Shown piece after piece: positions 3,670-56,051 of a stretch of 64,000 bases of DNA. Origin of the DNA: Dendrobates tinctorius (lineage: Eukaryota); the NCBI RefSeq assembly GCF_039654945.1, contig NW_027361959.1, positions 7,750,001 to 7,814,000 of the forward strand, written 5' to 3'. Position numbers and translations under genes: made by a program. Below the pieces are notes generated by a model. It did no database searches. It was not told the DNA's origin and worked only from the letters and a program-made list of their open reading frames with translations. The stretch's first letter is position 1, and every line of letters begins with the position of its first letter.

Positions 3670-6553
3670 CTCCTTAATCACCCATGATGTACATTTGTAC
3701 AATGTAAGTCGCTAATGTAAGTATGAAGCTGGCTTAGCAGCTGAGCCAGCTTAACCCCTTCATGACCGTAGCAGTTTTCGTTTTTCGCTCCCCTTCTTCC
3801 CAGAGCCATAACTTTTTTTATTTTTCCATCAATATGACTGCTTATTTTTTATGGGATGAGCTGTACTTTTGAACGACACCATTGGTGTTTTACCATGTCT
3901 TGTACTCAAAAACGGGAAAAAAATTCCAAGTGCCGTGAAATTGCAAAAAAAAGTGCAATCCCACATTTGTTTTTTGTTTTGGCTTTTTTTTTTTGCTAGG
4001 TTCACTAAATGCTAAAACTGACCTGCCATTATGATTCTCCAGGTCATTGAGTTCATAGACACCAAACATGTCTAGGTTCTTTTCTATCTAAGTGGTGAAA
4101 AAAATTCCAAAGTTTGCTTAAAAAAAAATTGCCCATTTTCCGAGACCCGTAGCGTCTCCATTTCTCTATCGCCTCATTGGGGTACACAGGAACCATGGGT
4201 CTATGCTGCTGTTGCCACTAGGAGGCTGACACTATGCACATGAAAAAAGTTTGCTCCTCCTCTGCAGTGTACACCCCACTGACTGGCACTAAGTTTATCA
4301 GTTTTAGCTTAGTGTCAGTAGCAAGTGAATACTGGTCTTTCATTAGACCTTTATCTACCTCAGTGTGCGTCGTTCCTTTTCAGGCACCCAGAGGGATGTT
4401 GTGAACAGTCACTACTGTACTCCCACAAAGAGACTGAGTATGGCGTGTACTGCCATCTCGTATCCTCATATGTCTGGCCGGCAGGACCACAGCCCCTAAC
4501 ACAGAAGCGTATTCAGGTGAGCTGGATCCTGTCCTGCCTTCGTCCCTCTACCCACTCGCCCACCAGAGCCTGTCGGTTTGTGGAGACGCGGACATCCCGC
4601 ACCGCTTGATCTTCGGACGTCCGATATTCAGGAGTGGAGGTATTTCTCTCTTTCCCCCCTCCCCTCCAGGACCCGGAGTAAAATAAGAAATTGAAGATCA
4701 GGGAGATAAAAAAAAAAAACAAAAAAACATGCCTTTATTTCATTTTTGGGTATTCCCCTTTAATCCTCCTTTTCCAGTCACAATGCTGGATATCTGACCG
4801 AGATCCAGCTGGTGGAGTATTGATTACACACAGGGCACGTCTCATACCTTGCTCTGTGTCCTGCCCGCAGCTGCGCATTTGGATCTGTGCTTACTGGCTA
4901 CCGTGCCGCTCTCCCATGCTCCAACGGTCACCAGCGCTAATCTAGGTCCCGGCTTCGGCTGGGCCTAGCTGCAGAGTTGGCTCCGCCCCCTTTTCCTTGT
5001 TCTTCGGGCGGGCTTTTCTCCCACCCGTCGCTTCAGATGTTCCCTTCCGGCCTGCGGCTAGTCTCGCCTCCCACGGCTTCTTCTCTCCGCCGGAGCCAGC
5101 GCCATCTTACTGCTCCAGGACCTGGTTCTTTGCTCCGCCCCCTCTTCTCCTCCCTGCTTTTCGGGAGTTTGTTCTCCCGTCTCCTGAGGTTTCTGCTGGC
5201 CTGTGGCTAGCTCCGCCCCTCGGCCTCATCCCCCTCTGGAGTCAGCACCATCTTGCTGCTCCAATGCCTGGCGCTTAGCCCCGCCCCCTTCTCATCTGGC
5301 TTTTGGCACGGGCTTTGCAGCATACACCAGCAGCGCGTGCTTTTTGTCCCATGGATCTTGCCTCCCTCCTCGCAGGATCCTGTTGGTGCCTTCGTTACTA
5401 CCTGGACCGAATACCTCACGGGGGACATGAGTTCTGACGTTCTACACGAACTGTGAGTAGCTGCTCTGCAGCCTGACACTCTCCTCTGCATCTTTTCTGT
5501 CCCCTAACCTGGCATCAGTTAGTGGGTCTGCTCATCATGCCTAAGCATAAAGGAGAGCCTGCTCGTCTCCCTGCTTCCTCTTCCTCTGACTCCTCCACCC
5601 TTGTCAGACACTTCATGTGCTCTTTGTGCAAAACCAAACTCCCCTAAGGTCAGTCCTCTCCCTCTGTCAGGACTGCAGCAACCCCACTGTGCCTACTGCC
5701 CAGGAGTCCCTTCCCACCCCAGGCGAGACTGAGACACCTGTTTAAAACAGGTGACATGTCGCGACTCACCGCCAGAGCCCACCTCAAAGCGGGGGATACT
5801 GCCAGCTGACGTACTATTCCGTCAGCTAGCAGTAGGAGGTTAATACCAGGCAGACCTTGGATGTGTTATTTAGCTGGCATCTGTCTGTGACTGCAGCAAC
5901 TGGAGTTGGTTCTGATCTCTGCAGTTAAACCACTTAAATGCTGTTGCTAATCTGTAATAGTGGAATTTTCTTGCTGCCATTGCAGGGAAATGTCACTATG
6001 GCAGCCAGGGGACTGCGGGAAGACCATGTAACTGCTATCTTTGTTCTAAGAAATTCAGCCCACAAGCTGATCTTAGAACATTGATTTCTCTATCTATTGG
6101 AATACTGTGGTGTTGCATAGTATAAAGCATCAAACAATTGCAAGTTGAAGTCCCCTAAGGGAATTTAAAAAAAATAGGTAAAAATGGGGAAAAAAATCTT
6201 TATGAACAATACATAAGAAAAATAAAAGCTTAAATCGCCCCCTATCTTCCCTTGCAAAAATACATAAAAAAATAAACGTTAGACACAGATGCCAATATCT
6301 ATCAAAACGTAAAATTACTTAAACTGCACATTTAACACATAAAAGAAAATTGGAATGCTATTTTTCTGACGCTGTACTTCTCCCACAATATTTAGTTAAA
6401 AAACAAAATGACACTTGTATCCCAAATTAGGATCAATTAAAACATCAAGCTCTCATACAGTTAAGTCGCCGATAATATAAAGGTATGGCTCTTGGAATGA
6501 AAGGGGAGCAAAGAAATATCTAAAAACAATAAACTGTGTAGTCATGAAGGGGG
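3670..6553. mobile_element. Nested TTAA-flanked piggyBac-type non-autonomous elements (outer ~3670..6553, inner ~3755..5839)
   Basis: ttaa-ctcctt and ttaa-cccctt starts; ggagg-ttaa and aaggggg-ttaa ends; similar to other intronic copies. Confidence 0.55.
4161..5740 (+). mobile_element. DIRS retrotransposon 5' fragment (left ITR, GC-rich leader, start of gag with CxxC motif)
   Basis: Starts tttctctatcgcctcattgggg like the other DIRS left ends; gag-like MPKHK...FMCSLCK at ~5537; truncated. Confidence 0.8.
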
Positions 6554-9950: not shown

Positions 9951-11274
9951 TACCCTGTGTTTTGCGTCCACTTCTGGTGCTGACTGATGTGACTTTCTTT
10001 ATCGCCTTATTGGGGGACACAGATTACCATGGGTGTATGCTGCTGCTGCTAGGAGGCTGACACTATGCAAAACAAGAAAATTAGCTCCTCCCCGGCAGTA
10101 TACACCCACCGACAGGCACCAAGCACCTCAGTTTGTGCTTAGTGTCTGTAGGAGGCGGACCGGGATCTCCCCAGATCCGCAGTTAACTTTTTTCCCTTAG
10201 GTTTTCTAGTAGAACGTTTTTAATTCTTTGTCTTTTGTCTTTCAGATTCAAGTCGGGAAACAGGGTGTAAGTTTCACCCTGATTTCCCATATCAGGCGGC
10301 TGAGCGAGCAGTGTGGCGTACCCCACATCGCAACTCTCAGTACCGCTGGCAGGACTTTTTCCCTATCACCTTCTGGTGCTATGGGTTGTGGGCAGGTGGC
10401 TGGTCCTTGCCAAATCCCCCTCCTCACCCCTCTCTCGGGACAGGGCTGAGAGGAAGACGGCGATCGCAAGTAGTGCATCCTCCACATCCAACAAGAGGTT
10501 AACGCCGTCTTCTGCAGGATGCGGGTACAGAGGACATTTCCCAGCGGCTTGCCTTATGCTCGTGGGCCCCTGTGATCATCCTCTTCAGGGACGTCAGGTA
10601 AGTGCCTGTACGATCCCTCCAGCCCCGCAGTGTTACCAGAGAACCCATCGGGAGTAACAGCTACAGGCTTCCCTGTTTGAATCTCCCGCCTCTCTCCCCT
10701 GCCTGCCGCGCACCGCTCTCATCAGCCGCGCGCCTCCCTATCTATATTCAGGGGGGCACAGAACAATTCACAGCCTGGGCAGGGATTTCAAGGGAATCTG
10801 CCGGCATTGTACCGTAATATCGGCGTTTTTTATTGTCCTGAGTAGTTATCAGGCACCGGGCTGCGGCGGCATCAGTTTCACTTTCACTTTCGTTTCAGCT
10901 GCTTTCAGCGCGTTTCCTCCTCCTTCTGAGCGCGCTTTCCTGCGCGCCTTTCCTATCCTATCACAGGGCTCCTTTCTATTTTGCCATAGCCAGCTCCCTT
11001 CTCCCCGCGCCCTCCTTACTGCCCTTATCCAATCGCGGCTCAGCTGCTAAGCTCCGCCCGCCGCTTCCTTTATACAGTAGTTCCTGGTCGTCTTTTCTCT
11101 TCCTGTGTTGCGTGGGGGACACGTCGGCTTTCTCTGCTCGCCTGAATCTCGGTAGGCTCTGCGGCTCAAATTAGCTCCTCTCCGCATTTTTTCCCCCTAA
11201 CTCGTCTGGCCATTCAGCGCAGGTTACTTAGGCCCAACCCTTCAAGGGGTCTCAGCTTCAGGCCCACAGCTACC

Positions 11275-12620
11275 CACTACGCTTGTGCGCGCTGTAATAA
11301 GAAGTGGGCTTCAGGTCAGTCATCCCCCTTCTGTCCGTCCTGCAGGCCTTCCATTATGTCTGCCTCTCAGGAGCACACCGAGTCCCGGGATGAGGATGCT
11401 CCACCTCCCCCAGAGTGGACCGTGGTAATGTCTCAGTCGGTCGCTGACTTGACTAAAGTTTCTCAGTCTCTGGTCCAGGTCTTAGAACGATTGCCTCAGC
11501 TAGCTACAGCCACCTGCGCACCGACCGCCTCTCAAGGTGAGTCGTCCGCACCTGACCGCGACCTTCAGAGAGAAAGATCGGGCAGGAGTTCTAGGCGATG
11601 ACTCCCAATCGGGGTCTAGTCCAGACGCCGACAACGCATCTAAAACACGGGACATGGTCGATAGTCTCATTTCGGCTATCTTCCAAACCCTTAAAATTAA
11701 GCAAGATAAAGCTCCCCCTCAGGAAGGCTCTGTGCTCTTTAAACGAGCAAGGCCCCCATCTCGAACCTTTCCCAATCACAAAGAGTTCGAGACTACCTTG
11801 TCCAAACACTGGGAGCGCCCTGAGCTACGTTACTCAGGCCGCAGGTATTTAGACGTCCTGTATCCCTTTGATGCGGACCTGCTCACAAAGTGGACCAAGA
11901 CTCCCGAGGTGGATCCCCCAGTGTCACGGATAGCCTCAAAAACGGTTCTATCCCTGACAGATGGGGCATCGCTTAAAGATCCTACTGACAGGCAGATTGA
12001 ATCTCTGGCTAAGTCAATCTTTGAGGCATCCGGCGCCTCCCTCTGTCCTATTTTCGCATCCGCCTGGGTGGTGAAAGTCATTTCCGCTTGGGCTAAAATT
12101 CTTCGCAAGGGCATCTTAGCGACAGCTTCTCAAGACAAGTTAGCAGATCTGGTAGATCAGATTAACCATGCGGGTAAATACCTTTTGGCCGCCTCCTTGG
12201 ACGCGGCCGGGTGTGTAGCTATGGCTAACAGCAACGTAGTCGCTATACGCCGAGTCCTTTGGCTAAAGTCATGGAATGAGGATACTACTTCAAAAAAGTC
12301 GCTTACTAATCTGCCATTCCATGGCTCTAGGCTCTTTGGAGCCAAGCTGGATCAGATAATCTCCGATGCCACTGGCGGTAAAAGCACTTCTCTCCCCCAA
12401 TTCTTGACCAAAACGCTTTTTTAACAGAAAGGGTTTTCGGCCGTTCAGGTCCTTTCGTCCCTTCTCTTCCACGGAAAGATCTGCTCCGCAAGATCGCTCT
12501 TCCACCACTAGGGAGAAGAAAAAGGAAAAAAAAAAAAAAAACCTTCTTGCAAGCCCCGCTCCCCGCTGGAGATCTAGAGGTCTTCAGGCGCCAGTTCCGG
12601 CAGGTTTTCCTCCAAGTGAC
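11275..12620 (+). pseudogene. DIRS gag-like ORF1, frameshifted
   Basis: CARC...CPSC zinc-finger-like motif, PPEW, P.VDPPVSR, LKDPTDR, LPFHGSRLFG homologous to intact ORF 35801..37243. Confidence 0.85.
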
Positions 12621-12650
12621 GGGTCACCCCCACCTGGAAGTTCTTCCAGG

Positions 12651-14500
12651 GTGGGAGGCAGACTTTCCCTTTTCGTCGATGCTTGGCTGTCCGCTGTCGA
12701 CTACACTTGGGTCAGAAAAATCGTCGCATCCGGTTACAAGATCGAATTTGCTTCCCCCCCAAACAGACGGTTTTTCCTGTCTCGACCCCCGAGACAGTGG
12801 TCCCTTATTCCAGGGTTTCTTCAGGCCATTTCCTCCCTTCTTTCCGCCGGAGTGATTGTTTCCGTCCCCCCAAACGAACGGGTTTCAGGGTTTTACTCAA
12901 ATCTCTTCGTAGTCCCGAAGAAAGACGGCTCCCTTCGCCCAATCCTGGACCTCAAATTGCTCAATCGCCACGTGAAGATTCTTCATTTCAAAATGGAGTC
13001 CCTTCGGTCGGTGAGAGCCTCAATGGAACCCGGAGAATTCCTCTGCTCGGTGGACATATGGGATGCCTATCTTCACATACCTGTTTGTTTGCAACATCAG
13101 AAATATCTTCGGTTTGCGATTCAGGAAAATCACTACCAGTTCACGGCTCTCCCCTTCGGCCTAGCCTCCGCTCCCTGTGTTTTCACAAAGGTGATGGCAA
13201 CAGTCATGGCCATCCTTCGCTCCAGGGGGATCCTCACCATCCCTTATCTGGATGATCTCTTGATCAAGGGCTCGTCCCGCCAAGACTGCCTTCAGAGTCT
13301 TCAGATAACCCTGGACACTCTCTGCGTTCTCGGATGGCTAGTCAACAAGGAGAAGTCCATTCTGATCCCCACGCAGCGTCTGACTTTTCTGGGCATGGAA
13401 TTCGACACTAACCTGGGCCGGGTGTTTCTCCCGAGGGAAAAATTTACGGCTCTTTCCAAGGGTATCAAAATCCTCAAACGGCCAGCGCCCATCCCCCTTC
13501 GGTCCTGCATGAAGGTTCGGGGGAAGATGGTAGCTTCCATGGAAGCAGTGCCCTTTGCACAATTTCATCTTCATCCCCTCCAGCTATGCCTTCTTTCAGC
13601 CTGGGACAAGTCCACGCTGTCCTTGGACCGTCCCATTCTCCTCCCTCTCAGAGTGAGGCAATCCCTGACTTGGTGGGCAATGCCAGCGTCGGTTCTACAA
13701 GGGAGGTCTTTCCTTCCGCTTCAGTGGCAAGTCATCACCTCCAATGCCAGCCTTCTAGGCTGGGGAGCGGTGTTCCATCAGAAAGCGGCCCAAGGCCGCT
13801 GGAATCCACAGGAGTCTTTTCTGCCTATCAATCTTCTGGAGATCAAAGCAATCTTCCTGGCCCTTCCTCGCTGGCAGCCTCTCCTCGTCGGCAAGCCAGT
13901 CCGCATTCAGTCGGACAATGCCACGGTGTGGCGTACATAAACCACCAGGGGGGCACTCGCAGAAAGCAAGTAATGTCAGAAGTGGCCAAGATACTGCACT
14001 GGGCGGAATGTTACGTTCCGGCAATCTCAGCCGTTCACATTCCAGGGGTGGAAAATTGGGCAGCCGACTTTGAGTCGTCAAGGTCTAGCGTCAGGCGAAT
14101 GGGCTCTTCATCCCAAAGTCTTCGATCAGATATGACAGCGCTGGGGCTCACCGGATATCGATCTCATGGCATCTCGGATGAACCACAAAGTTCTGCGCTT
14201 CGTAGCCAGGTCCAGGGACCCTCTAACCGTCACTTGCGACGCCCTAGTAATACCGTGGTCCCAGTTCCGACTTCCTTATCTGTTTCCGCCTCTTGCCTTG
14301 ATCCCACAAGTGGTCAAAAAGATAAGATCGGAAGGCGTACCAGTTATTCTAGTGGTGCCAGACTGGCCGAGACATCCTTGGTACGCGGAACTGGTGAACA
14401 TGCTCGCGGACGTTCCCTGGAGGCTTCCAGACCGTCCGGATCTTCTCTTGCAAGGCCCTCCTTTACCACGAGAATTCTCAGTCTCTGAGTTTAACGGCAT
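12651..14500 (+). pseudogene. DIRS RT-RNaseH-methyltransferase ORF2, frameshifted
   Basis: YSNLFVVPKKDG, LPFGL, YLDD, SNAS..GWG, INLLE, SDN, YLFPP. Confidence 0.92.
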
Positions 14501-15494
14501 GGCCATTGAGGCCGCAATTCTGAGAGAATCAGGTTTGTCTGACCAGGTGATTCAGACTATGATCAGAGCCAGAAAACCGGCCTCTTCCCGCATTTACATA
14601 GGTACTGGAAGGCTTTTTTCCGTTGGTGCGACGATATCTTTCAGATGTCCTTTTCTATTTCATCCATACTTGGGTTTTTCCAGTCTGGTGTAGAGGCGGG
14701 TCTGTCCATCAGTACCCTCAAGGGCCAGGTCTCCGCTCTATCTATCGTCTTCCAATGAGAGCTCGCTTCCTTGTCGCAGGTTAAGACCTTTCTCCAAGGG
14801 GTCGCCCATGTGGCTCCCCCTCATCATTCGCCGATAGACCCGTGGGATTTGAATCTCGTCCTTAGTACTCTTCAAAAGGCGCCGTTCGAGCCTATCCAGG
14901 ACATTCCTTTATCAATTCTCTCATGGAAGGTAACCTTCTTGATTGCCATTACATCCATCAGAAGAGTTTCTGAGTTGGCGGCCTTGTCATGTCGTTCCTT
15001 CACTTCTTCCGAAGGTGGTGTCCTCTTTCCACATCAGTGAGGATATCGTTCTCCCATCTTTGTGTCCTGCTCCTTCTCATCCTCTTGAGAAGTCTCTCCA
15101 CAAACTGGACGTAGTTAGAGCCTTGCGTGTCTATCTCGCCAGGACCTCTTCTTTTCGTCAGTCCGATTCTTTGCTGGTCATCTCTGAAGGTCACCGGAAA
15201 GGGCTTCCGGCTTCTAAATCCATGATCGCTCGCTGGATTCGTTCGACCATTCTGGAAGCTTACCGTCTTCAGGAAAAACGGCCCCCTCCGGGAGTGAGAG
15301 CTCACTCCACCTGGGCTGTGGCGGCTTCGTGGGCCGTTCGTCACCAAGCTTCAGCTTTACGAATTTGCAAGGCCGCGACCTGGACGTCCTTGCACACCTT
15401 TGTGAGGTTCTACAGGGTTCATACCCAGGCCTCGTCTGATGCAGTTGTTGGAAGGAAGGTTCTGCAGGCGGCGGTGGTACACCGGCCGACCTAA
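14500..15494 (+). pseudogene. DIRS tyrosine recombinase, disrupted
   Basis: PWDLNLVL, SIRRVSEL, AHSTWAV (catalytic R changed to W), AATW, RFY. Confidence 0.9.
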
Positions 15495-16006
15495 GCCTTT
15501 CCTATTCTTTCGTTCCTTATTGCTGTTCCCGCCCTTGGGACTGCTTTGGAACGTCCCATGGTAATGTGTCCCCCAATAAGGCGATAAAGAAAGATGGATT
15601 TTTGGTTCTTACCGTAAAATCTCTTTCTTGGAGCCTTCATTGGGGGACACAGCACCCGCCCTGTTTAAGTTGTACTGTGTTGGGTCTTTGAAACACTTGT
15701 TGGGTTAGTACATATGTTTAGTGTTTTCTCGTTGCTTCTCCTACTGCTTTCTCACCAACTGAGGTGCTTGGTGCCTGTCGGTGGGTGTATACTGCCGGGG
15801 AGGAGCTAATTTTCTTGTTTTGCATAGTGTCAGCCTCCTAGCAGCAGCAGCATACACCCATGGTAATCTGTGTCCCCCAATGAAGGCTCCAAGAAAGAGA
15901 TTTTACGGTAAGAACCAAAAATCCATCTTTTCTTCTACACTCTATACAATTGGAGCCTCCCACCCATATCATTGCCCTTCATTTTTCATCTCCTTTTTTC
16001 CTTCAG

Positions 16007-33079: not shown

Positions 33080-34771
33080 TTTCCACTGTTTGGGCACATC
33101 AGGGGCTCTCCAAATGCAACATGGCGTCTGATCTCAATTCCAGCCAATTCTGAGTTGAAAAAGTCAAATGGTGCTCCTTCCCTTCCAAGCTCTGCTATGC
33201 GCCCAAACAGTGTTTTACCCCCTCATGTAGGGTATCAGCCTACTCAGGACAAATTGCAAAACAATTTTTGGGGTCCAATTTCTCCTGTTACCCTTAGGAA
33301 AATAAAAAATTGGGGGCAAAAATATCATTTTTGTGGAAAAAAAATGATTTTTTTATTTTCACGTCCGAGTGTTATAAACTTCTGTGAAGCACTTGGGGGT
33401 TCAAAGTGCTCACCACACATCTAGATAAGTTCCGTGGGGGGTCTAGTGTCCAAAATGGGGTCACTTGTGGGGAGTTTCAATAGTTTAGGTACATCAGGGG
33501 CTCTCCAAACGCACATGACAACCGCAGACCATTCCATCAAAGTCTGCGTTCCAAAACGTCACTGCTTCCCTTCCGAGCCCCGACGTGTGTCCATACAGTA
33601 GTTTTCTCCCACATATGGGGTGTCAGCGTACTCAGGACAAATTGGACAACAACTTTTGGGGTCCAATTTCTCCTGGTACCCTTGGGAAAATAAAAAAAAT
33701 GGTGACTAAAAGATCATGTTTGTGGAAAAAATACGAATTTTTTATTTTCACGCCCGGGCGTTGTAAACTTCTGTGAAGCACTGGGGGGGTCAAAGTGCTC
33801 ACCACACATCTAGATAAGTTCCTTGGGGGGTCTAGTTTACAAAATGGTGTCATTTGTGGGGGGTTTCCACTGTTTAGGTACATTAGGGGCTCTCCAAAGG
33901 CAACATGACACCCGCAGACCATTCCATCAAAGTCTGCATTCCAAAACGTCACTACTTCCCTTCCGAGCCCTGACGTGTGCCCATACAGTAGTTTTCTCCC
34001 ACATATGGGGTAGCAGCGTACTCAGGACAAATTGGAAAACAACTTTTGGGGTCCAATTTCTCCTGGTACCCTTGGGAAAATAAAAAAAATGGTGACTAAA
34101 AGATCATGTTTGTGGAAAAAATACGAATTTTTTATTTTCACGCCCGGGCGTTGTAAACTTCTGTGAAGCACTGGGGGGGTCAAAGTGCTCACCACACATC
34201 TAGATAAGTTCCTTGGGGGGTCTAGTTTACAAAATGGTGTCATTTGTGGGGGGTTTCCACTGTTTAGGTACATTAGGGGCTCTCCAAAGGCAACATGACA
34301 CCCGCAGACCATTCCATCAAAGTCTGCATTCCAAAACGTCACTACTTCCCTTCCGAGCCCTGACGTGTGCCCATACAGTAGTTTTCTCCCACATATGGGG
34401 TAGCAGCGTACTCAGGACAAATTGGAAAACAACTTTTGGGGTCCAATTTCTCCTGGTACCCTTGGGAAAATAAAAAAATGGTGACTAAAAGATCATGTTT
34501 GTGGAAAAAATACGAATTTTTTATTTTCACGCCCGGGCGTTGTAAACTTCTGTGAAGCACTGGGGGGGTCAAAGTGCTCACCACACATCTAGATAAGTTC
34601 CTTGGGGGGTCTAGTTTACAAAATGGTGTCATTTGTGGGGGGTTTCCACTGTTTAGGTACATTAGGGGCTCTCCAAAGGCAATATCACACCCGCAGACCA
34701 TTCCATCAAAGTCTGCATTCCAAAACGTCACTACTTCCCTTCCGAGCCCCGACGTGTGCCCATACAGTAGT
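33080..34771. repeat. Tandem array of ~390-bp units (left part)
   Basis: Near-identical ORF translations offset by 390 nt (33632/34022; 33823/34213). Confidence 0.92.
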
Positions 34772-35800
34772 TTTCTCCTTCGTCTCATTGGGGGACACAG
34801 AGACTGTGGGTGTGTGCTTCTGCCGTCTGGAGGCCGACACTAAGTGTACAAAAAAAGAGTTAGCTCCTCCTCCGCCGCATACACCCTCGCCCCTAGGCCG
34901 GGCGTAACTCAGTTTTTTGCTTAGTGTCTGATGGAGGCACACGCAGTCTGGAGTTCCAGACTAGATTTTTTTTTTTTTTTTTCCCTTTTTTCTATGAAGA
35001 TAAGATAGGGGCGACGGATCCTATAGAGAGGATCCGATCTCCCCAAATCACCAACGGGCGACCACGTGTGAGTAACCCTCCACGTGTCCTCTCCCGCACC
35101 GAGGGACACATCTGGGACTTTTTTCCAGACATCTATTTTTTAACGAAAGAGGGGCAACGCGTCCTGATTAGAGGACTCGGTTTCCCCACAACTTCATCAG
35201 GCGCGTGTGAGCAGAACCAGTGGTCAGCCTCCACGTTGTTCCTCTCCTACAACAGCAGTGTATGGAGGCCCCGTCCACCCCTTGGTTGTGAGTCCAGGGG
35301 GCTGAATCGGAGACGCAGGTGAGAGCGGGAGCGGGGGTTCCGGTACGCCGCGAGTAAAACCGACAGAGCCCCCCCCCCCCCTCCCCCCGCCTGCACGGCG
35401 GATGGTCCTGCTCACCTTTTAATATATGGGGGATCCGCTCCTGGAGCGCACCGCAAGTTGGCGTTGCACCCGGGCTCCGCACGCCGCGTGTATCGGAGCG
35501 CGGCCGGAAGCCCGCCGGCGGTCGCGGCCCCGCTGCAATCGCGCGAAGCCGCGCGCCGACTTCCGGTGGTAGCCGGAAGTCCCGCCCGCTGACTTCCGGT
35601 GGTAGCCGGAAATCCCGCCCGCTGACGAGACGCGCGATATAGGTTCCGGAGAGACTTCCGCCCTAACACCTCGCATCCACGCAGGGGTACTGCAGACAGG
35701 AGCCGGTGGGTGAGTGTATCTCCGTTTGGAGAACCACGCTGCTTGTCAGGGAAGAGGTTACCCTCCTCCTCCTTCTACTCTGCCTTCAGCCTGTGCAAGT

Positions 35801-37243
35801 ATGTCTGCCAAAGGGAAAGCTCACTCTTTCCTTTACGCGGTTTGCGTGTCCTGTGGGGTCAGGCTGCCAAAGGCACAGGCGGGTAAATATTGTGAAGCCT
35901 GTGAGTCGGAGCGCGCCCAGGAGCCCCCCACTGTTTCTGAACCCAGGGGTCAGGACCCCCCGGAATGGGCGGTGTCCTTATCGCAGTCTATGCTGTCCCT
36001 TACAAGGGCAATTGAATCCCTTCAGGGCCCGGGCAGGAGCAGGGAGGGGGGTCTGCCGGCGGAAGAGAGCTCGTCCTCGTCTCAGGACCCTCCAACCATT
36101 AGAGGTCGCTCCAGTACCAGGCAAGCTCATATCAAGAGGGTTCGTTCCCCGTCAGCCGGACCCTCCGGGGCTTCGGCGGCGGGTATTAGGGCATCCCGTT
36201 CCCCGTCACTGAGCTCTGGGAGCGATCAGGATGAAGGAGAGGAGGAAGAGGCCTGGAATCTAGAAAGTCTGGGGTTCCAGGATTCGGTGGACAGTCTCAT
36301 TGAGGCAGTCAACCAGACATTAGAGATCGAGGACGATGTGCCCACAGCCTCAGGTCACAAGGTCTCTTTTAAGAAATCCAGGCGACCACATAGAAGATTT
36401 GCCACGCATCCGGAGTTTGAGGAGCTAGTCCAGAAACATAGAGATCACCCGGATAAGCGTTTTGCAATGCAAAAAGCGCTGCAGGCAAAGTATCCGTTTC
36501 CTCCTGAGCTCCATAAGGCTTGGGTAGAGTCGCCAGTAGTGGACCCTCCGGTATCACGTTTAGCATCAAGATCGCTATTGTCGATACCCAGTGTTTCCTC
36601 TATAAAGGACCCAACTGATCGCCTCATGGACGGGCTTGCCCGCTCGGTATATGAGGCAGCAGGGTCGGCTCTGGCCCCCTCCTTTGCGGCGACTTGGGTG
36701 GCTAAGGCCATGGTTTCGTGGGGGGACGCTCTGTATAAGGCCCTCCAGGACAGGGATCTCCCCGCGGAGGTCTTAGAGGTGGCAAATCAGATGTCAGGAG
36801 CAAGTGATTATCTTGTCAGCGCCTCACTGGACGCGGCCGAGTGCTCGGCGGTGGCGGCGGCGAATGCGATCGCCATTAGGCGTGCATTATGGCTGAGACT
36901 GTGGAAAGCGGATTCTATCTCTAAAAAATCCTTAACCTCATTGCCGTTTCAGGGCAATCGACTGTTCGGTGAGAAGCTGGACAAGCTTATCTCAGAAGCC
37001 ACAGGGGGGAAAAGTAGTTTCCTTCCGCAGCAGAGAAGTTGCCCGGCATTCAGGCAAACGCAAAGGCGTTTTCGACCCTTTCGTAGCCCCTGGGGGGGGA
37101 CTTCGGCCAGGGCGTACTCCTCCGCAAACGATGGCCAGAGTAGGGAAAAACAAGTCTCTTACAGGGCCAATCCGCTGGGTAGAGGCCGAGGCCATTTACC
37201 CAGAGCGAAGGGGGCCAAGCCCCAAAAGCCTCCAGCTAAATGA
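35801..37243 (+). CDS. DIRS ORF1 gag-like protein (N-terminal CxxC-CxxC)
   Basis: ATG MSAKGKAH...CVSC...CEAC; open frame from 35714; homologous to ORF1 of 9994..15930. Confidence 0.9.
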   Translation: MSAKGKAHSFLYAVCVSCGVRLPKAQAGKYCEACESERAQEPPTVSEPRGQDPPEWAVSLSQSMLSLTRAIESLQGPGRSREGGLPAEESSSSSQDPPTIRGRSSTRQAHIKRVRSPSAGPSGASAAGIRASRSPSLSSGSDQDEGEEEEAWNLESLGFQDSVDSLIEAVNQTLEIEDDVPTASGHKVSFKKSRRPHRRFATHPEFEELVQKHRDHPDKRFAMQKALQAKYPFPPELHKAWVESPVVDPPVSRLASRSLLSIPSVSSIKDPTDRLMDGLARSVYEAAGSALAPSFAATWVAKAMVSWGDALYKALQDRDLPAEVLEVANQMSGASDYLVSASLDAAECSAVAAANAIAIRRALWLRLWKADSISKKSLTSLPFQGNRLFGEKLDKLISEATGGKSSFLPQQRSCPAFRQTQRRFRPFRSPWGGTSARAYSSANDGQSREKQVSYRANPLGRGRGHLPRAKGAKPQKPPAK

Positions 37244-39149: not shown

Positions 39150-40168
39150 CACAGGCAGGATTCAGACGCGATGTGGCGGCCACGATGGTGAGTGCCCGAA
39201 AGCCTTCCTCGGCGAGGGTGTATCATCGAACTTGGGAAGTTTTCTTCCGTTGGTGTAGGGATCGTGAAGTGGCTCCTCTGGTTTTTTCGATCCCCAACGT
39301 ACTGGCTTTTCTACAGGCAGGGCTGGACGCAGGGTTGGCCCCGAGTTCCCTCAGAACGCAAATCTCGGCCCTGTCGGTACTTTTCCAACGAAAAGTCGCT
39401 TCCGTCTGGCAGGTTAGGACGTTTATGCAGGGGGTCGCACATTTAGTACCCCCCTATAAGGCGCCGACGGAATCATGGGACCTGAACTTGGTGCTCAGAG
39501 CCCTTCAGGAGGCCCCTTTCGAACCATTGCAAGAGGTCTCCTTACCTTACCTGTCCAGAAAGGTCGTTTTTCTAGTAGCCATAACGTCTATTAGGCGGGT
39601 TTCGGAATTGGCGGCCTTATCTTGTAAACCACCGTTCCTAACCTTTTATAAGGATAAGGTAGTTTTAAGGCCAGCTCCCCCCTTCTTGCCGAAGGTTGTG
39701 TCTGCATTTCATATCAACGAAGACATCGTCTTACCCTCATTTTGCCCGGCACCGGTGCACAGGGTAGAGAAGGCTTTGCACACCCTGGATCTGGTAAGAG
39801 CTCTTAGGAGGTATGTGACAAGGACGGCGCCATTCCGCCAGACAGACGCTCTATTCGTGGTTCCAGAGGGACGGCGGAAGGGGCTCGCTGCGTCCAGAGC
39901 GACTTTGGCCAGATGGGTTCGCCTGACGGTCCAAGAAGCTTATCAAATCAGTGGCACGCCGGTTCCGGCAGGGATCAAGGCTCACTCGGCACGGGCAGTG
40001 GGTGCCTCATGGGCACTACGACACCAGGCTTCAGCGGAGCAGGTATGCAAAGCAGCTACCTGGTCCAGTTTACATACGTTTGTCAAACATTATAACGTAC
40101 ATACCCAGGCATCCTCGGATGCAAGCCTGGCAAGAAAGATTCTCCAGGCAGCAGTTGCGCACCTCTAA
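37307..40168 (+). CDS. DIRS ORF3: tyrosine recombinase with long N-terminal region overlapping ORF2
   Basis: SIRRVSEL (R), AHSAR (HxxR), AATW, KHY (Y); 953-codon open frame. Confidence 0.93.
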   Translation: MGRSDTRHLGGRTCIVRVQDRVCRTATSAILPFATFQNRFAGGEFVTGCNIATAQRGHRPSAAGRRVAGVLLQSFFGPQKRRDCEAGSGSKDPKQIHQGQAIPDGIPPLGHCSHGSRGIPGLNRCAGCISAYSDIPPTPEVPAICDRRTSLPIRGSALRSGHCPQSLYKDNGGGYGHPACTGHNGVTLPGRPLGKGAVVSGVPGQCQYYSGYPGPSGLADQLEQVVFGSSPKNRVPGHDFRHLPGAGDPPSGQGAKNQARDTEPSTAGLQIHPVWHECFGQNGGGDRSNPVCPVPSPAASACALDSMGPEAAVSQSSVQVVSAGTGFTPVVDSRLVSGPGETLSPGTMVGGDDRCKPARLGSSFPESHSPGAVVRSGDSSPDQHSGDTGNTIGPTTFPVFPETPAGAHPDGQCYSSSICQPSRGHAQPGSHARGRTGTMLGGEEPRGNFSGAHSRSRKLGGRFSQPTGGRGRGMVPAPRDLSADLPTVGDTRRGPYGIQRECQSTKVCRSIPRSAGNRSRRAGAPVEPVSSPVLVPPAAAASKSYQENKEREGSSNSAGPRLAPAGLVRRSGPTSGGRTLASSRSAGLTVPRADLPSELRGPVFDGVAIESWLLTQAGFRRDVAATMVSARKPSSARVYHRTWEVFFRWCRDREVAPLVFSIPNVLAFLQAGLDAGLAPSSLRTQISALSVLFQRKVASVWQVRTFMQGVAHLVPPYKAPTESWDLNLVLRALQEAPFEPLQEVSLPYLSRKVVFLVAITSIRRVSELAALSCKPPFLTFYKDKVVLRPAPPFLPKVVSAFHINEDIVLPSFCPAPVHRVEKALHTLDLVRALRRYVTRTAPFRQTDALFVVPEGRRKGLAASRATLARWVRLTVQEAYQISGTPVPAGIKAHSARAVGASWALRHQASAEQVCKAATWSSLHTFVKHYNVHTQASSDASLARKILQAAVAHL

Positions 40169-40657
40169 TCAGGGGCGCAAATTAGCAGGGATTGGGTGAG
40201 CTAAGATCCCGCCCAGAGGACTGCTTTAGGACGTCCCACAGTCTCTGTGTCCCCCAATGAGACGAAGGAGAAACATGGATTTTTGTGAGTACTCACCGTA
40301 AAATCCTTTTCTCCGAGACGCTCATTGGGGGACACAGCACCCACCCTATCAGCCAGTTGGCATTTACTTATTTTGAGTTTTACAAATCCTTGTACAAGGT
40401 TTAGGGTGGCCCCCTTTTTCAGACATATAGTTTCTTGCCTGAGTTTAAGGCGCGTTCTCCTACTGCTTATGCACTAAACTGAGTTACGCCCGGCCTAGGG
40501 GCGAGGGTGTATGCGGCGGAGGAGGAGCTAACTCTTTTTTTGTACACTTAGTGTCGGCCTCCAGACGGCAGAAGCACACACCCACAGTCTCTGTGTCCCC
40601 CAATGAGCGTCTCGGAGAAAAGGATTTTACGGTGAGTACTCACAAAAATCCATGTTT

Positions 40658-50192: not shown

Positions 50193-52450
50193 CCATCGCT
50201 TCATTGGGTGTGAAAGGAAACCATAGGACATCCTAAAGCAGACCCTAGTGTGGGGAATAAAACAGCTACTCGCGGATCTGATTTCAGTCTGCTGTTGTAC
50301 GCAGAACTTTCCTGTTCAGGCTGACATTTACTGAAGCATAGGTGAGTACAGTGTAGAACTTGGAGAAGGTATGGACACAGACCAGAAAGCATCCTAGCAG
50401 CTGTAAGGCAGAGGCCTGATGGCAAACAACCCGGGAAAGCTCCAATGCACATGAGGTATGAGCAGTGACCCTGAGCTGGAGCAGATTTTCCTTCATTTTG
50501 CACCCTACCATGACGTGAGTTTAAATCCATCGGGCAATGTGAGTCTTGAAAGCGGGTAGACCACCTTCAGAAATCACAAAGATATCCGAACGTCTGTAGG
50601 ATGCTGTCCTTATGAAGAAAGGATGGGACACAACGTGGGTGTACCTTATCCTCATGGCTGACCAGGAAAAACACAGTGGGAAAAGATTCAAGTTCAGAGA
50701 CACGCCATTATGGAGGTGATTGCTACAGGATCGAAATCTTCCAGGTAGGCAAAGAGAGGAACATTGTAAATGGGTTCAAAGAGTGAACCTTGGAGAACGG
50801 GCAAGACTGTGACATTTCACGACTCCAGGATGAGCAACTCCCTGTAGCAAAATTCTGATTTGGGCACTAGAGGCCAAGAAGTTTTGGAAGAGGATAGAAA
50901 ATGGTGGGGACCTGACCTTTTTAGGGGGCTGAGATACAGTAGAGTCTAGGCATGAAACACAAATAGACCCAGCTACGCTCACAGGATCTCCACAGTCTTT
51001 TGCGTCAATAGGTAAAGTTCTATTCTATAACTTTGTATATAGATTAACATGCCTTCATATTAATATAATAGTGGCCACTTGGCTTTGTATCTGAGCATGT
51101 ATGTAAACCTTTGTTGTCATGCACTCGCACTTTTGATATGAGGGTATCTGATATGAAGTTTCATTATATTAAAAAATATTTTTGATTATACAATGATTGT
51201 AGTTACAATTCCATACGTAACCTATGTATTACATGACTAGTTTCTATAATCTTTTGGACTTCTTTTATAAACTAGTGAATTAATTAACCATTACAAGTGT
51301 ATGCAAAAGTCTAGCCTGTAAGGATGACCCCAGGATAGTGCGGAGATGTTGAGTTCAGCCAAAAAAAAAAATGCGGTAAAGCTCTGATAAGACTACTGTG
51401 CTCAGTGTTCTGCCCTGGTGATTGATGTAAGCCACGGCTGTGGCGTTGGCCAGATAAATGGCCCTAAAGGTTGAAAGGAAGAGAGGATTCCTGTGTTTCC
51501 AACAGGCCTGGGCCGCAAGCTCCTGGAAGACAGCTCCCCAACCCTGAAGACTGGACTCTTATGACGACCTTTTGGCAGAAAAGGAGAGTCACGTGATGAA
51601 TGAGGAGAGGAATGCCAAGTCATGAAATGCTTTACTCAAGGGGGAAGGACAAAGGGCAGATCTAGGAATGTTACCGTACTTTCAAGTTGTGAAGGGTCAG
51701 CTGAAAAGAACGAGTGTGAACTGAGAAAACAGAACTGCTTCCAATGCTGTCACGATTTTGCCCAACATGCTCATGCAGAGCTGAAGGGGACAAGGGAGAT
51801 CGTTACTTGAGAGACTAGATCTTGAGGAGAAGGTGGGGTTTTTCTGCCTCGTAGACCAGAAAGGATACAGTACTGACACAACTCCACACACTGCACTCGG
51901 TCTATTGGTAAAATATCATAATGACACAACTTCACTTTTCTGCCCTCACAAGCCGTATCTGAAAGAAATAAAAAATCAAAGAAAAGAAATTATTAAACAG
52001 CAAAACCCCAAAGGTAGAAACAAAACTTGGTCCAGACTCATTTCTGCCTCCTACTGACACTGAGCTAAAACTTATTGATTAGCTCCTTGACAGTTGGTGA
52101 GCGTACACTTTTGGGTATGAGTTAATGTTTTTTTGCCTAGGGTCAGCAGCATACACCCATGGTTTCCTGAGTCCCCCTATGAAGCGATAGAGAAACTACA
52201 ATTACATATATTTGCAAGTGTTTTTTTTTTGGTCCTGCTAGTGGTTTTGTTTTAAAAATACGCAAGGAAATTGTGCCTATAATACGTTTCAGTGACCAAG
52301 GTTTCATCACTTTTTCTGTGAAGTTGTAGCTTTTTCCTGTGAGGGAAAATCCTCTATTTGACTGTGATGTGTTAGTAGACCTTTATACAAACCATTTACT
52401 TGGCATTTGTTAAGTTTATACTGTTTTTAATTTTTTCCCTTTTTTTATAG

Positions 52451-53264: not shown

Positions 53265-56051
53265 TTTACTCTGTCGCCTCATTGGGGGAGACAGAACCAT
53301 GGGTGTTATGCTGCTGTCCACTAGGAGGCGACACTATGCATAATCTGAAAAAGATTAACTATGGCTCCTCCTCTGCAGTATACACCCCTGGACGGCGTCA
53401 GCCTTCTCCAGTTTTTGCTTAGTGTCGCAAGGAGGCACACCTAAATAATTTTTTTTTTTCACTCTGTTTTTTTCCCGGATGACAGATGAAGAAAAGCGGG
53501 TCTCCTGTGAGACTCCCGGCATGGCTCTTTCCTCGGCCCCCTATTATGGGGTGCCCGGTTGAAGTAGAGATGGTCGTTCCCCATGTCGCTCCTTCCCCAG
53601 TCCTGCGGGTGCTGGCTCGAAGTTGAGTCAACCTACAAAAGTCAGTGACTACCCAGAGTCAGTCCCTGACCTTCCTGGGGATGCTATTCGACACCTCCAG
53701 GGGGCTGGTGCTCCTTCCCAGGGACAAGGCACTGGCTCTCCGTCTGGGAGTTCGCATACTCCTCCGCAATCCCCCCCGATCTCCGGTTTGCCATGAGAGT
53801 CCTCAGCAGGATGGCAGCAGCAATGGAGGCGGTACCATTTGCCCAGTTTCACCTCCGGCCTCTTCAACTAGCCATCCTCAGGTCCTGGGACAGGAATCCT
53901 TTCTCCCTCGACCGGGAGTTCCGGCTAACATCGTCCACCAGGAGGTCCCTACACTGGTGGCTCAAGCCAACTTCGCTTGCAAGGGGAAATCCTTTCTCTC
54001 AGGTCAATGGAAGGTCCTGGCCACCGATGCAAGCCTGACAGGTTGGGGTGCGGTGCACCTACATCACAGGGCACAAGGCAAGTGGTCACCAGTGGAAGCA
54101 ACCTTGCCCATCAACATCCTGGAAATTCGGGCCATCCCCCTGGCATTGAGAGCCTTTCATCACTTGCTGGCAGCCTCTCATATCAGGATACAGTCAGACA
54201 ATGCCACGGCGGTGGCATATGTGAATCACCAAGGAGGGACCCGCAGTACCCAGGCGATGAGAGAAGTGGCTCATATCCTCCACTGGGCGGAAGACACGAG
54301 GTCGGTACTCTCTGCAGTCCACATTCCGGGTGTGGACAACTGGGAAGCCGACTTCCTCAGCAGACAAGGAATGGACTCGGGGGAGTGGTCTCTCCATCCT
54401 GAAATTTTTCACCAGATCTGCCATCGCTGGGGGACCCCGGACGTGGATCTAATGGCATCCCATCTCAATGCCAAGGTCTCCAATTTCATAGCCAGGAAAC
54501 GCGACCCGCGGTCGCTCGGAGCGGATGCCCTGGTTCAGGACTGGACCCAGTTCCAGCTTCTCTACATTTTTCCACCCCTCCCCCTGATCTCAAGAGTCGT
54601 GAGGAAGATCAAGCAAAAGGGAGTTCCAACCATCCTGATCGCGCCGGACTGGCCCAGACGTACATGGTACGCCGACATCGTACAACTTACAGCAAACGCC
54701 CCCTGGCGTCTCCCCAACCGTCACGACCTTCTGTCACAAGGTCCGTTCTACCATCAGAACTCGGGCTCTCAATTTGATGGCGTGGCCCTTGAGACCTGGG
54801 TTCTAGCCCAGGCAGGGCTCTCACCGGACGTCATTACGACCATGATTAGGGCAAGGAAGCCAGCCTCCGCCAAGATCTATTACCATACCTAGAGAGCTTT
54901 CTTTACCTGGTGCCAATCTCGCGGACAGGTCCCACTCTTATTCCCTCCCAAAGGTACTTGGTTTTCTTCAATCGAGCCTGGACGCCAGGCTATCTCTAGG
55001 CTCGCTTAAGAGCCAGGGTGTCGGAATTGTCAGCACTCTCCTGCAGACTGTCCTTCCTAGCTTTTCACCAGGACAAGGTGGTTCTCCGTACAGTACCATC
55101 CTTCCTTCCGAAGGTTGTGTCCAACTTTCACCTCAATGAGAAAATTTCACTGCCGTCCCTTTGCCCGGTCCGGTTCATAGAGTGGAGAAGGCTCTGTATA
55201 CGCTTAACCTCGTCGGGGCATTGCGTATATACGTGTCTAGGACTGCACCCTTCCGGAAGTCTGATTCCCTTTTCCTTCTTCCGGAAGGCGTTCGCAAGGG
55301 TCTGCCGGTTTCCAAAGCTACCCTTGCCAGGTGGATCAAGTCCACCATACAAGAGGCTTACTGCCTTAACAATTCTCTTCCGGCCGGTATCACGGCACAC
55401 TCTACGTGGGCAGTAGGGGCCTCCTGGGCCATTCAGCACCAGGTTTCGGCACAAGTGTGCAAGGCTGCCACTTAGACTAGCCTATACATGTTTACGAAAC
55501 ACTACAGTGTTCATACCCAGTCCTCAGCAGATGCGAGCCTGAGTAGACGGGTTCTGCAGGCAGCAGTGCCTCAAGTTTAGGGACCTGCTAGCACAATATT
55601 CGTCCATTGCTTCCCACCCAGGGACTGCTTTGGGACGTCCCATGGTTCTGTGTCCCCCAATGAGGCGACAGAGTAAAGGAGATTTTTGTGTACTCACCGT
55701 AAAATCTCTTTCTCAGCCTCTAATTGGGGGACACAGCTCCCACCCTGTTGCCCTTACGGGCCGTTGTTACGGTTCAGTTCTCATATTGTTCTTTGAGCTC
55801 GTAGAGAGTGGCCTTCTTACAGGCATGGTTATGTTTCTGTTAATGTTCCTCCTAATGCTTTTGCACAAAACTGGAGAAGGCTGACGCCATCCAGGGGTGT
55901 ATACTGCAGAGGAGGAGCCATAGTTAATCTTTTTCAGATTATGCATAGTGTCGCCTCCTAGTGGACAGCAGCATAACACCCATGGTTCTGTGTCCCCCAA
56001 TTAGAGGCTAAGAGAAAGAGATTTTACGGTGAGTACACACAAATCTCCTTT
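53265..56051 (+). mobile_element. Internally deleted DIRS (no gag or RT N-terminus) with both ITRs and ICR
   Basis: Left end tttactctgtcgcctcattggggg, ICR ~55638-55736, right ITR from ~55867; RNaseH/MT and YR remnants. Confidence 0.93.
53645..55580 (+). pseudogene. DIRS pol C-terminal part and recombinase remnants
   Basis: TFLGM, ATDAS, SDNATAVAYVNHQGG, YIFPP, FLPKVVS, AHSTWAV; frameshifts and deletions. Confidence 0.88.

What the first reader, a model, noticed from the sequence alone, without database searches (positions are those of the whole stretch)
10031..10156. Conserved, co-varying pseudoknot-like fold at the 5' end of divergent DIRS families (candidate new structured RNA or ribozyme)
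Seen: four DIRS families with different ITR sequences keep the same pairings. Stem A is GGGTGTATGCTGCTG (10031-45) with CGGCAGTATACACCC (10093-107), GGGTGTGTGC/GCATACACCC at 34808/34877, and equivalents at ~4197/4264 and ~53301/53375, with G-U to G-C switches. Stem B pairs a segment inside stem A with one downstream: GACACTA/TAGTGTC (10059/10140), GACACTAAG/CTTAGTGTC (34836/34920), CTGACACTA/TAGTGTCAG (4226/4310) and GCGACACTA/TAGTGTCGC (53328/53420, compensatory). A variable hairpin lies between the 3' strands of A and B. A GCTCCTC tract is conserved, and in three of the four copies (G)GAGGC recurs just after stem B. In the three copies with both ITRs, the 3' strand of B lies just outside the ITR, so the fold can form only at the left end. 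Known: helix order A5'-B5'-A3'-hairpin-B3' resembles HDV-like ribozymes at the 5' ends of R2/RTE elements. However, the P1.1 GG and canonical J4/2 are not evident and there is a spacer after B5'. Inference: a functional RNA or ss-cDNA element for 5' processing, priming, packaging or blocking ITR-ITR duplex formation. I cannot confirm it is undescribed.
Basis: partly seen in the sequence, partly recalled or inferred. Interest (0 to 1): 0.78.

Follow-up and report, generated by a model that had tools for sequence, protein, structure and literature searches.

The report
Conserved base-pairing at DIRS left ends
The left ends of DIRS jumping genes in this poison frog, other frogs, snakes, a worm lizard and a turtle keep two matching base-paired stems through compensating mutations, so this is a real, undescribed nucleic-acid signal of the element, but there is no sign that it is a ribozyme.

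Summary
A fifth, decayed left end lies at 52042-52181 on the minus strand.

Within the window the B core (GACACTA/TAGTGTC) never varies, so covariation there is thin. Elements fetched from seven other tetrapods settle the matter: the same layout recurs with different sequence.
- B is GACACTT/AAGTGTC, extended to about 29 bp, in Xenopus.
- B is 25 bp in Engystomops, 19 bp in Rhineura and 9 bp in Pantherophis.
- A covaries among frogs.

The pairing between ITR interior and inner flank is left-specific (Fisher p 2e-9 at the left end, 0.76 at the right). Non-Watson-Crick pairs are all G·U on the sense strand (10 versus 0 A·C).

No Rfam family matches even at E≤10, and the defining HDV-like features are not met.

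B3′ always starts 3-10 nt after a (Py)nCAGT motif that is a perfect initiator. Distant DIRS conserve this motif at the ITR inner edge, some with TATAAA about 30 nt upstream. The sense RNA therefore probably starts between A3′ and B3′.

I favour (about 0.4) pairing of the RNA leader with the hairpin-A loop of the cDNA copy of the right ITR. An in-cis RNA pseudoknot is the main rival (about 0.25). The scan noted other DIRS leader hairpins elsewhere in this genome.

The parts
9993..10033 (+). Left terminus of the 10-kb element, complementary to the left half of its ICR (15555-15593). It ends at the GGG that opens stem A.
10031..10045 (+). Stem A, 5′ strand (GGGTGTATGCTGCTG)
10052..10057 (+). GGAGGC-1. 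It pairs with the GCTCCTCC tract as the inner helix of hairpin A.
10059..10072 (+). B5′ (core GACACTA 10059-10065, plus an A-rich extension) in the loop of hairpin A
10084..10091 (+). GCTCCTCC tract, complementary to both GGAGGC tracts
10093..10107 (+). Stem A, 3′ strand (CGGCAGTATACACCC). It aligns with the TATA-box stretch GCAGTATAAAACCCCC of the fish element L005.
10111..10150 (+). Local alternative hairpin H. A proximal B5′-like copy (GGCACCAAGCAC) pairs with B3′, and CAGTTT sits in the loop.
10128..10134 (+). TCAGTTT, an initiator-like motif (YYANWYY) 7 nt before the end of the ITR arm
10133..10146 (+). B3′ (core TAGTGTC 10140-10146, plus a T-rich extension), present only at the left end
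10151..10156 (+). GGAGGC-2, just after B3′
34808..34817 (+). Stem A, 5′ strand of the 34-kb element
34836..34844 (+). B5′ (GACACTAAG) of the 34-kb element
34877..34886 (+). Stem A, 3′ strand of the 34-kb element
34908..34918 (+). CTCAGTTTTTT, the initiator-like motif of the 34-kb element
34920..34928 (+). B3′ (CTTAGTGTC) of the 34-kb element
4196..4318 (+). The same module in the 4-kb copy: A 4196-4208 / 4264-4276 and B 4226-4237 / 4307-4318
53301..53428 (+). The same module in the 53-kb copy: A 53301-53314 / 53375-53387 and B 53328-53336 / 53420-53428. B extends to 20 bp and includes the CAG.
52042..52181 (-). Fifth, decayed left end, of a minus-strand element. B has 10 of 12 pairs.
15753..15897 (-). 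Right ITR of the 10-kb element. It carries hairpin A and B5′ (read on the minus strand) but has no B3′ in its inner flank.
40468..40607 (-). Right ITR of the 34-kb element. Its inner flank keeps only a TAGTG remnant of B3′.

Best explanation
What it is (shown): a selected base-pairing module at the DIRS left end. A hairpin inside the ITR (stem A plus the GGAGG/CCTCC helix) carries segment B5′ in its loop. B5′ is complementary to B3′, the 10-30 nt that follow an initiator-like (Py)nCAGT at the inner edge of the left ITR. B3′ is absent from the right end. Both helices are kept by compensatory changes across frogs, and B also across squamates and a turtle. Wobble pairs favour the sense strand.

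How it most likely works (inferred, about 0.4):
1. As in Dictyostelium DIRS-1, the sense RNA starts at the CAGT motif. It therefore lacks the left ITR and begins with B3′.
2. Reverse transcription first copies the right ITR, so the 5′ end of the minus-strand cDNA has the sequence of the left ITR.
3. That cDNA stretch folds hairpin A and displays B5′.
4. The RNA leader (B3′, and in some families GGAGG-2) pairs with that loop.
5. This brings the RNA 5′ end, where the polymerase runs off, next to the ITR copy that must template regeneration of the missing left ITR. It would be a donor-acceptor juxtaposition device, like the cis elements that guide template switches in hepadnaviruses.

It is not a ribozyme of any known class.
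For: Pairing is real:
- Different sequence, same layout, in L006, L001/L093, L002, L007, L003, L092 and L004.
- Left-versus-right test: p = 2e-9 versus 0.76.
- Pair counts against slid partners and shuffles.
- Folds with z = -5.7 to -8.1 in Xenopus, Engystomops, Rhineura and Dendropsophus.

Sense strand:
- 10 G·U versus 0 A·C inside helices A and B.
- The minus strand of the right ITR has the same sequence as the left ITR, so it satisfies this as well.

Start of the RNA at CAGT:
- YYAGWYY lies within the last 30 nt of the ITR arm in 16 of 28 DIRS, against 7% expected.
- TATAAA lies about 30 nt upstream in L005, L022 and L069.
- Frog A3′ aligns with the fish TATA stretch.
- Dictyostelium RNA lacks most of the left repeat, and its extrachromosomal minus-strand cDNA lacks only the left repeat (PMC7192593).

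B3′ is anchored to this motif, starting 3-10 nt after it in all frog and squamate families.
Against: - No transcript data could be obtained. The runs found gave DNA-like contigs, so the start site is inferred from motifs and from an amoeba.
- The contiguous sense strand folds very well in cis.
- In three families a local hairpin spans the CAGT. That is easier to understand if one RNA contains both sides of it.
- The polymerase must unwind B to copy the leader, and I could not derive a complete replication scheme in which the docking is indispensable.
- Whole-segment folding energies show no consistent strand preference.
Confidence: 0.4

Rival explanations
1. An intramolecular RNA pseudoknot. 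A sense transcript that starts near the left terminus contains A, B5′, A3′, the variable hairpin and B3′. It folds co-transcriptionally into a 5′ cis-acting domain for packaging, dimerisation or priming, or to keep the left ITR from zipping up with the right ITR.
For: - All strands are contiguous on the sense strand and fold with z = -5 to -8.
- Wobble pairs are G·U on this strand.
- Local hairpins span the CAGT motif with covariation in three families.
- The ICR-complementary terminus ends exactly at the base of stem A. This would suit a start site within the first ~40 nt.
- There is a precedent for one stretch serving both as promoter DNA and as structured RNA: L1Tc Pr77 (PMC3383444).
Against: - An initiator consensus, with TATA in relatives, sits between A3′ and B3′.
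- The Dictyostelium RNA lacks the left repeat.
- An integrated copy has no promoter upstream of its own terminus.
Confidence: 0.25
2. A fold of single-stranded DNA. The stems would form in the completed single-stranded cDNA, for example to keep the ITR arms from forming a panhandle so that the termini can pair with the ICR. Alternatively they would give the tyrosine recombinase a folded substrate, as integron attC sites do.
For: - DIRS-1 replicates through linear single-stranded cDNA (PMC7192593).
- Hairpin A starts exactly where ICR complementarity ends.
- Structure is conserved while sequence is not.
Against: The cDNA is the minus strand. At the left end its version of A and B would carry A·C mismatches where the sense strand has G·U (10 versus 0). 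Only hairpin A, in the right-ITR copy, escapes this objection.
Confidence: 0.12
3. A DNA-level feature only. The inverted repeats would be paired binding sites (CACCC/GC boxes, or element-encoded protein sites) flanking the core promoter, with no nucleic-acid pairing.
For: - A3′ contains CACCC- or GC-box-like and TATA-like sequence.
- The fish element has CRE-like half sites as hairpin arms around its TATA box.
Against: - B changes completely in sequence and ranges from 7 to 29 bp between families.
- G·U but never A·C is tolerated.
- A host factor would not co-vary in this way.
Confidence: 0.08
4. A by-product of replication. B3′ would be copied from B5′ in each cycle, so complementarity would be automatic and not selected.
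For: ITRs are re-templated from one another in the accepted model.
Against: Young copies with 96-100% identical ITRs still carry G·U pairs and mismatches inside B: Engystomops has 2 G·U, Rhineura has 1, and the Dt34k extension has mismatches. I could not find a polymerisation path that writes B3′ from B5′.
Confidence: 0.07
5. A self-cleaving ribozyme, HDV-like or of a new class, that trims read-through transcripts at the element's 5′ end.
For: The helix order A5′-B5′-A3′-hairpin-B3′ equals P1-P2-P1-P4-P2. HDV-like ribozymes sit at the 5′ ends of R2 and L1Tc (PMC3185411).
Against: - No Rfam ribozyme model matches, even at E≤10.
- Stem A is 10-15 bp, not about 7 bp.
- There is no P3/L3/P1.1.
- Stem A is missing or only 6 bp in Engystomops, Pantherophis and Rhineura, while B persists.
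- There is no invariant unpaired core apart from CAGTTT.
Confidence: 0.04

Closest known systems
DIRS internal complementary region (ICR)
   Same: It is a short internal segment of the same element, complementary to part of the terminal repeats. It is conserved as complementarity rather than as sequence, and it is needed to rebuild the termini (PMC7192593, PMC3266345).
   Different: The ICR lies near the right end and matches the outermost 30-70 nt of both termini. B3′ lies just inside the left ITR and matches an interior ITR segment in a hairpin loop. It is not mentioned in the DIRS literature I searched.
Ty1 5′ pseudoknot (TIPIRT domain) and retroviral leader structures
   Same: These are long-range crossing helices in the 5′ region of a retroelement genome that act in cis in packaging, dimerisation and initiation of reverse transcription (PMC3592414, PMC5454406).
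   Different: They belong to a different element order and share no sequence or architecture with this module. Here half of the fold may lie upstream of the start site.
HDV-like ribozymes at the 5′ ends of R2, RTE and L1Tc
   Same: They sit at a retroelement's 5′ end and have the same order of helix strands. In L1Tc the same nucleotides also act as a promoter (PMC3383444, PMC3185411).
   Different: The P1 length, P3/L3, P1.1 and covariance-model match were all not met. Cleavage was not tested.
Hepadnaviral donor/acceptor repeats (DR1/DR2) and the cis elements that juxtapose them (from my own knowledge, not checked here)
   Same: The extreme 5′ end of the pregenomic RNA is repeated near the 5′ end of the minus-strand DNA. 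Base-pairing between distant cis elements guides template switches.
   Different: No homology. DIRS uses an ICR splint and a tyrosine recombinase. The analogy is only a working model.

Membership tests
HDV-like self-cleaving ribozyme | Strand order P1-P2-(P3)-P1-P4-P2 (nested double pseudoknot) | tested here: inconclusive
   The order A5′-B5′-A3′-hairpin-B3′ fits P1-P2-P1-P4-P2. However, the only helix between B5′ and A3′ is closed by GGAGG, which lies upstream of B5′, so it is not a P3.
HDV-like self-cleaving ribozyme | P1 of about 7 bp with cleavage at its 5′ base; 3-bp P3 with L3; 2-bp P1.1 | tested here: not met
   Stem A is 10-15 bp in dendrobatid, hylid, Xenopus and Pseudophryne copies, 6 bp in Rhineura, and absent in Engystomops and Pantherophis. 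No P3/L3/P1.1 was found.
HDV-like self-cleaving ribozyme | Match to the Rfam covariance models of the family | tested here: not met
   There were 0 hits at gathering score in the whole window. No ribozyme hit appeared at E≤10 on 34760-35010 or 9985-10230.
HDV-like self-cleaving ribozyme | Self-cleavage | not testable with these tools
   This needs an in vitro transcription and cleavage assay.
Any Rfam 15 family (hammerhead, twister, pistol, hatchet, hairpin and others) | Covariance-model match | tested here: not met
   Searches gave only chance-level miRNA and lncRNA matches with E of 0.04-5.6.
DIRS1-like retrotransposon | Inverted terminal repeats, plus an ICR complementary to both termini, plus RT/RNase H and overlapping ORFs | tested here: met
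   ITR and ICR were mapped. The RT ORF has DIRS relatives with PF00078/PF17917.
Cis-acting 5′-leader RNA structure of a retroelement (Ty1/retrovirus type) | Helices supported by compensatory change | tested here: met
   The alignments for searches were fitted to the model and lean towards it. One search uses raw helices in each family.
Cis-acting 5′-leader RNA structure of a retroelement (Ty1/retrovirus type) | The whole structure lies within the genomic transcript | not testable with these tools
   No RNA reads were available. Motif evidence suggests a start between A3′ and B3′.
RNA polymerase II core promoter (TATA + Inr) in the ITR | Initiator consensus YYANWYY at a conserved place | tested here: met
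   16 of 28 elements carry YYAGWYY within the last 30 nt of the ITR arm, against 7% expected.
RNA polymerase II core promoter (TATA + Inr) in the ITR | TATA box about 30 nt upstream | tested here: inconclusive
   TATAAA is present in L005, L022 and L069. In frogs there are only TATACA, CATACA, TTAA or CTAA at -28 to -36.

The most novel reading that the evidence does not exclude
B is the donor/acceptor homology of a so far unknown strand-transfer step in DIRS replication. The first ~20-35 nt of the genomic RNA dock on the loop of a DNA hairpin formed by the minus-strand copy of the right ITR. This positions the cDNA 3′ end (or an RNase H-resistant leader primer) for regeneration of the left ITR. 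It would be a hepadnavirus-like template-switch device in a tyrosine-recombinase retrotransposon, and it would begin to explain how DIRS elements rebuild their left end.
Probability: 0.3. Interest if true: 0.85.

Novelty: new variant of a known kind. Interest (0 to 1): 0.62.

Why it matters
How DIRS elements prime reverse transcription and rebuild their left repeat has been open since 1985, and only the ICR has experimental support. A second complementarity that is left-specific, covarying and anchored to the probable start site is a concrete cis element that can be mutated. Changing B5′ separately in the left and right ITR of a marked element would show which molecule folds and at which step it acts. 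It also gives annotators a structural signature for telling left ends from right ends in tetrapod DIRS.

Tried and rejected
They cover the whole element in short pieces and show flank-to-flank joints. They say nothing about start sites.
- Logan contigs L089-L091 (three runs) begin 10 nt before to 8 nt after the CAGT-like motif and lack the ITR. I could not tell a transcript end from an assembly break at the repeat.
- MAFFT alignments across families misplace A3′ and B3′ of Xenopus and Pseudophryne. I therefore used per-family helices and model-fitted alignments.
- RNAduplex allows long, loopy interactions and was noisy. I replaced it with an ungapped helix score.
- Comparing whole-segment folding energy on the plus and minus strands gave no consistent preference.
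- HDV-like and all other Rfam families: no match.
- Several strand-transfer schemes that use B as a direct repeat between the leader and the right ITR were worked through by hand. Each gives a product with the wrong polarity for rebuilding the left ITR, so I do not claim that B templates it.
- Non-tetrapod DIRS (fish and metagenome contigs) show only a weaker left-end signal (p = 1e-4 at the left, 0.02 at the right). I do not claim that the feature is universal.
- One Ranitomeya locus could not be fetched because the file was too large.

Full report
**Source and anatomy**

The RT ORF of the 34-kb element is 100% identical to a Dendrobates tinctorius protein, so the window comes from that frog.

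The window holds typical DIRS1-type elements.
- The 10-kb element spans 9993-15930, with ITR arms 9993-10137 and 15753-15897 and an ICR at about 15555-15652.
- The 34-kb element spans 34772-40661, with ITR arms 34784-34923 and 40468-40607 and an ICR at 40235-40337.
- Further left ends lie at about 4160 and 53265.
- A covariance model found a fifth, decayed left end on the minus strand at 52042-52181. Its right ITR lies at 46846-46995.

**Check of the observation**

- Stem A is a hairpin inside the ITR. Minimum-energy folding recovers it in three of four copies, together with an inner GGAGG/CCTCC helix (z = -5.1, -1.9 and -3.1).
- B5′ (GACACTA) lies in the loop of that hairpin.
- B3′ (TAGTGTC) lies at or just past the end of the ITR arm.
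- The right inner flank has other sequence there, apart from a TAGTG remnant in some copies.

The four copies are 72-75% identical over this stretch. The B core is invariant among them, so the window alone gives little covariation.

**Relatives**

I used the RT protein to fetch DIRS loci from other genomes and 80 metagenome contigs. I located their ITRs by self-comparison. The same layout recurs with different sequence.

| Species (locus) | Stem A | Stem B |
|---|---|---|
| Dendropsophus (L006) | GGGTATAGGCTGCTG / CAGCAGGCTATACCC | CTGACACTAAG / CTTAGTGTCAG |
| Xenopus laevis (L001, L093) | GGGGTTAAGC / GCTTAACCCC | GCAGGACACTT / AAGTGTCCTGC, continued by TCCATCCTCCAGG / CCTGGAGGATGGA (about 29 bp in all) |
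| Pseudophryne (L002, three copies) | GGGTTAGAGG / CCTCTAACCC | GGCACAGAAT / ATTTTGTGCC |
| Engystomops (L007) | not evident | 25 bp |
| Rhineura (L003) | 6 bp | 19 bp |
| Pantherophis (L092) | not evident | GATTGAGTC / GACTCAATC |
| Pelodiscus (L004) | not assessed | B-like 11-bp helix |

In almost every family A and/or B are the longest exact helices in the ~180-nt left end.

**Statistics**

- I scored the best ungapped helix between the ITR interior and the 45 nt around the ITR inner edge, against 2000 shuffles. Combined over nine frog and squamate families, p = 2e-9 at the left end. The same test at the right end gives 0.76.
- On model-fitted alignments, A is 86% paired against 41-52% when partners are slid. 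16 of 20 pairs change on both sides, against 6-11.
- B is 87% paired against 21-43%, with 10 of 12 pairs changing on both sides against 2-6.
- In both cases 0 of 500 shuffles reach the observed covariation. These alignments lean towards the model, so I rest the case mainly on the raw per-family helices.
- Fish and metagenome DIRS show a weaker left-end signal (p = 1e-4 at the left, 0.02 at the right). I treat this as a hint only.

**Strand**

Inside helices A and B the non-Watson-Crick pairs are 10 G·U and 0 A·C on the plus strand. I estimate seven or more independent events.

This favours sense-polarity sequence, which means either the left end read on the plus strand or the minus strand of the right ITR, since the two are identical. 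Whole-segment folding energies do not discriminate between strands.

**Not a known ribozyme**

- Rfam gives nothing at gathering score in the window. At E≤10 on the two best copies it gives only chance-level miRNA or lncRNA matches.
- Against HDV-like ribozymes the strand order agrees, but P1 would be 10-15 bp and there is no P3/L3/P1.1.
- Stem A itself is dispensable in several lineages that keep B.

**The start-site problem**

B3′ always begins 3-10 nt after a pyrimidine-rich tract ending in CAGT(T). This is a perfect YYANWYY initiator.
- The motif sits within the last 30 nt of the ITR arm in 16 of 28 DIRS from very distant hosts, against 7% expected.
- Three elements have TATAAA about 30 nt upstream.
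- The frog A3′ (GCAGTATACACCC) aligns with the fish GCAGTATAAAACCCCC.
- In Dictyostelium DIRS-1 the left repeat is the promoter, the RNA lacks most of it, and the extrachromosomal minus-strand cDNA lacks only the left repeat (PMC7192593).

The main sense RNA therefore probably begins between A3′ and B3′. An in-cis pseudoknot at the RNA 5′ end would then be impossible for that RNA.

I could get no transcript data. The runs found were DNA-like contigs, and three Logan contigs that begin near the motif are ambiguous.

**Mechanism**

The following are shown:
- complementarity that is conserved by compensation;
- left-end specificity;
- sense polarity;
- anchoring of B3′ to the CAGT motif.

The rest is inferred. 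I favour (about 0.4) pairing between the RNA leader and the loop of hairpin A formed by the cDNA copy of the right ITR. This would juxtapose the RNA 5′ end with the ITR copy that has to template the missing left ITR.

It needs a start site near the left terminus. Three points support it:
- the strong cis folds;
- local hairpins that span the CAGT motif in three families;
- the fact that ICR complementarity ends exactly at the base of stem A.

Lesser rivals are a single-stranded-DNA fold, protein sites in DNA, a by-product of templated copying, and a ribozyme. I worked through several schemes in which B acts as a terminal direct repeat for strand transfer. They give the wrong polarity for rebuilding the ITR, so the exact step remains open.

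**Literature**

DIRS papers describe ITRs, ICRs and left or right extensions, and a ~10-nt block shared by the ITRs and ICRs. They describe no ITR hairpin and no left-specific complement (PMC3266345, PMC9210276, PMC7192593). No paper links DIRS with a ribozyme.

Earlier notes of this scan report other hairpin modules in DIRS leaders of this genome and splice-like termini. They concern neighbouring features, not this pairing.

No N stretches were filled.

Noticed in passing
window 46846-52195 (minus strand): A further DIRS element lies on the minus strand. Its right ITR is at 46846-46995 and its decayed left end at 52042-52181.
   Followed up: partly
window 10128-10134, 34908-34918, 4301-4307, 53410-53416; also L001-L008, L092, L093 and many of L012-L087: A pyrimidine tract ending in CAGT/CAGA (YYAGWYY) lies 2-17 nt before the inner end of the left ITR arm in 16 of 28 DIRS from frogs, reptiles and unknown aquatic hosts. 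It is probably the initiator. It also looks like a 3′ splice site.
   Followed up: partly
window 15736-15749 and 40455-40468: TTCTCCTACTGCTT is conserved just inside the right ITR of two different families. It is complementary to the GTAGGAG(GC) that follows B3′ in the left leader. The ITR homology therefore continues, in degenerate form, beyond a left-specific insertion that holds B3′.
   Followed up: no
window 10111-10150, 4281-4320; L006:7264-7306: In three families B3′ has a second, proximal partner: a B5′-like copy with G·U pairs. This forms a 13-16-bp local hairpin with CAGT in its loop. It competes with the distal B5′ and could act as a conformational switch.
   Followed up: partly
window 15906-15913 and 40629-40636: The right terminal extension reads CGGTAAGA / CGGTGAGT, which is a consensus 5′ splice site.
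   Followed up: no
window 34751-34771 joined to 40655-40660: Contigs of four public runs join the left flank directly to the right flank, skipping 5883-5908 nt. Many loose ends read CACATATGGGGTATCAG. The element therefore sits in another repeat whose uninterrupted copies are common, and this confirms the element's ends.
   Followed up: no
L089:1-60, L090:1-40, L091:1-60: Three Logan contigs from three runs encode the same DIRS proteins. They start 10 nt before to 8 nt after a GGTCAGCTG motif, run through the left half of the ICR without a break, and stop inside its right half. If these runs are RNA, this hints at a transcript that lacks the left ITR but includes the right terminus.
   Followed up: partly
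L005:7283-7330: In the Sparus DIRS the TATA box sits in the loop of a 10-bp palindrome (GTGATGACGT / ACGTCATCAC) whose arms are CRE-like half sites. It is a hairpin-like arrangement around the core promoter, with different sequence from the frog stem A.
   Followed up: no
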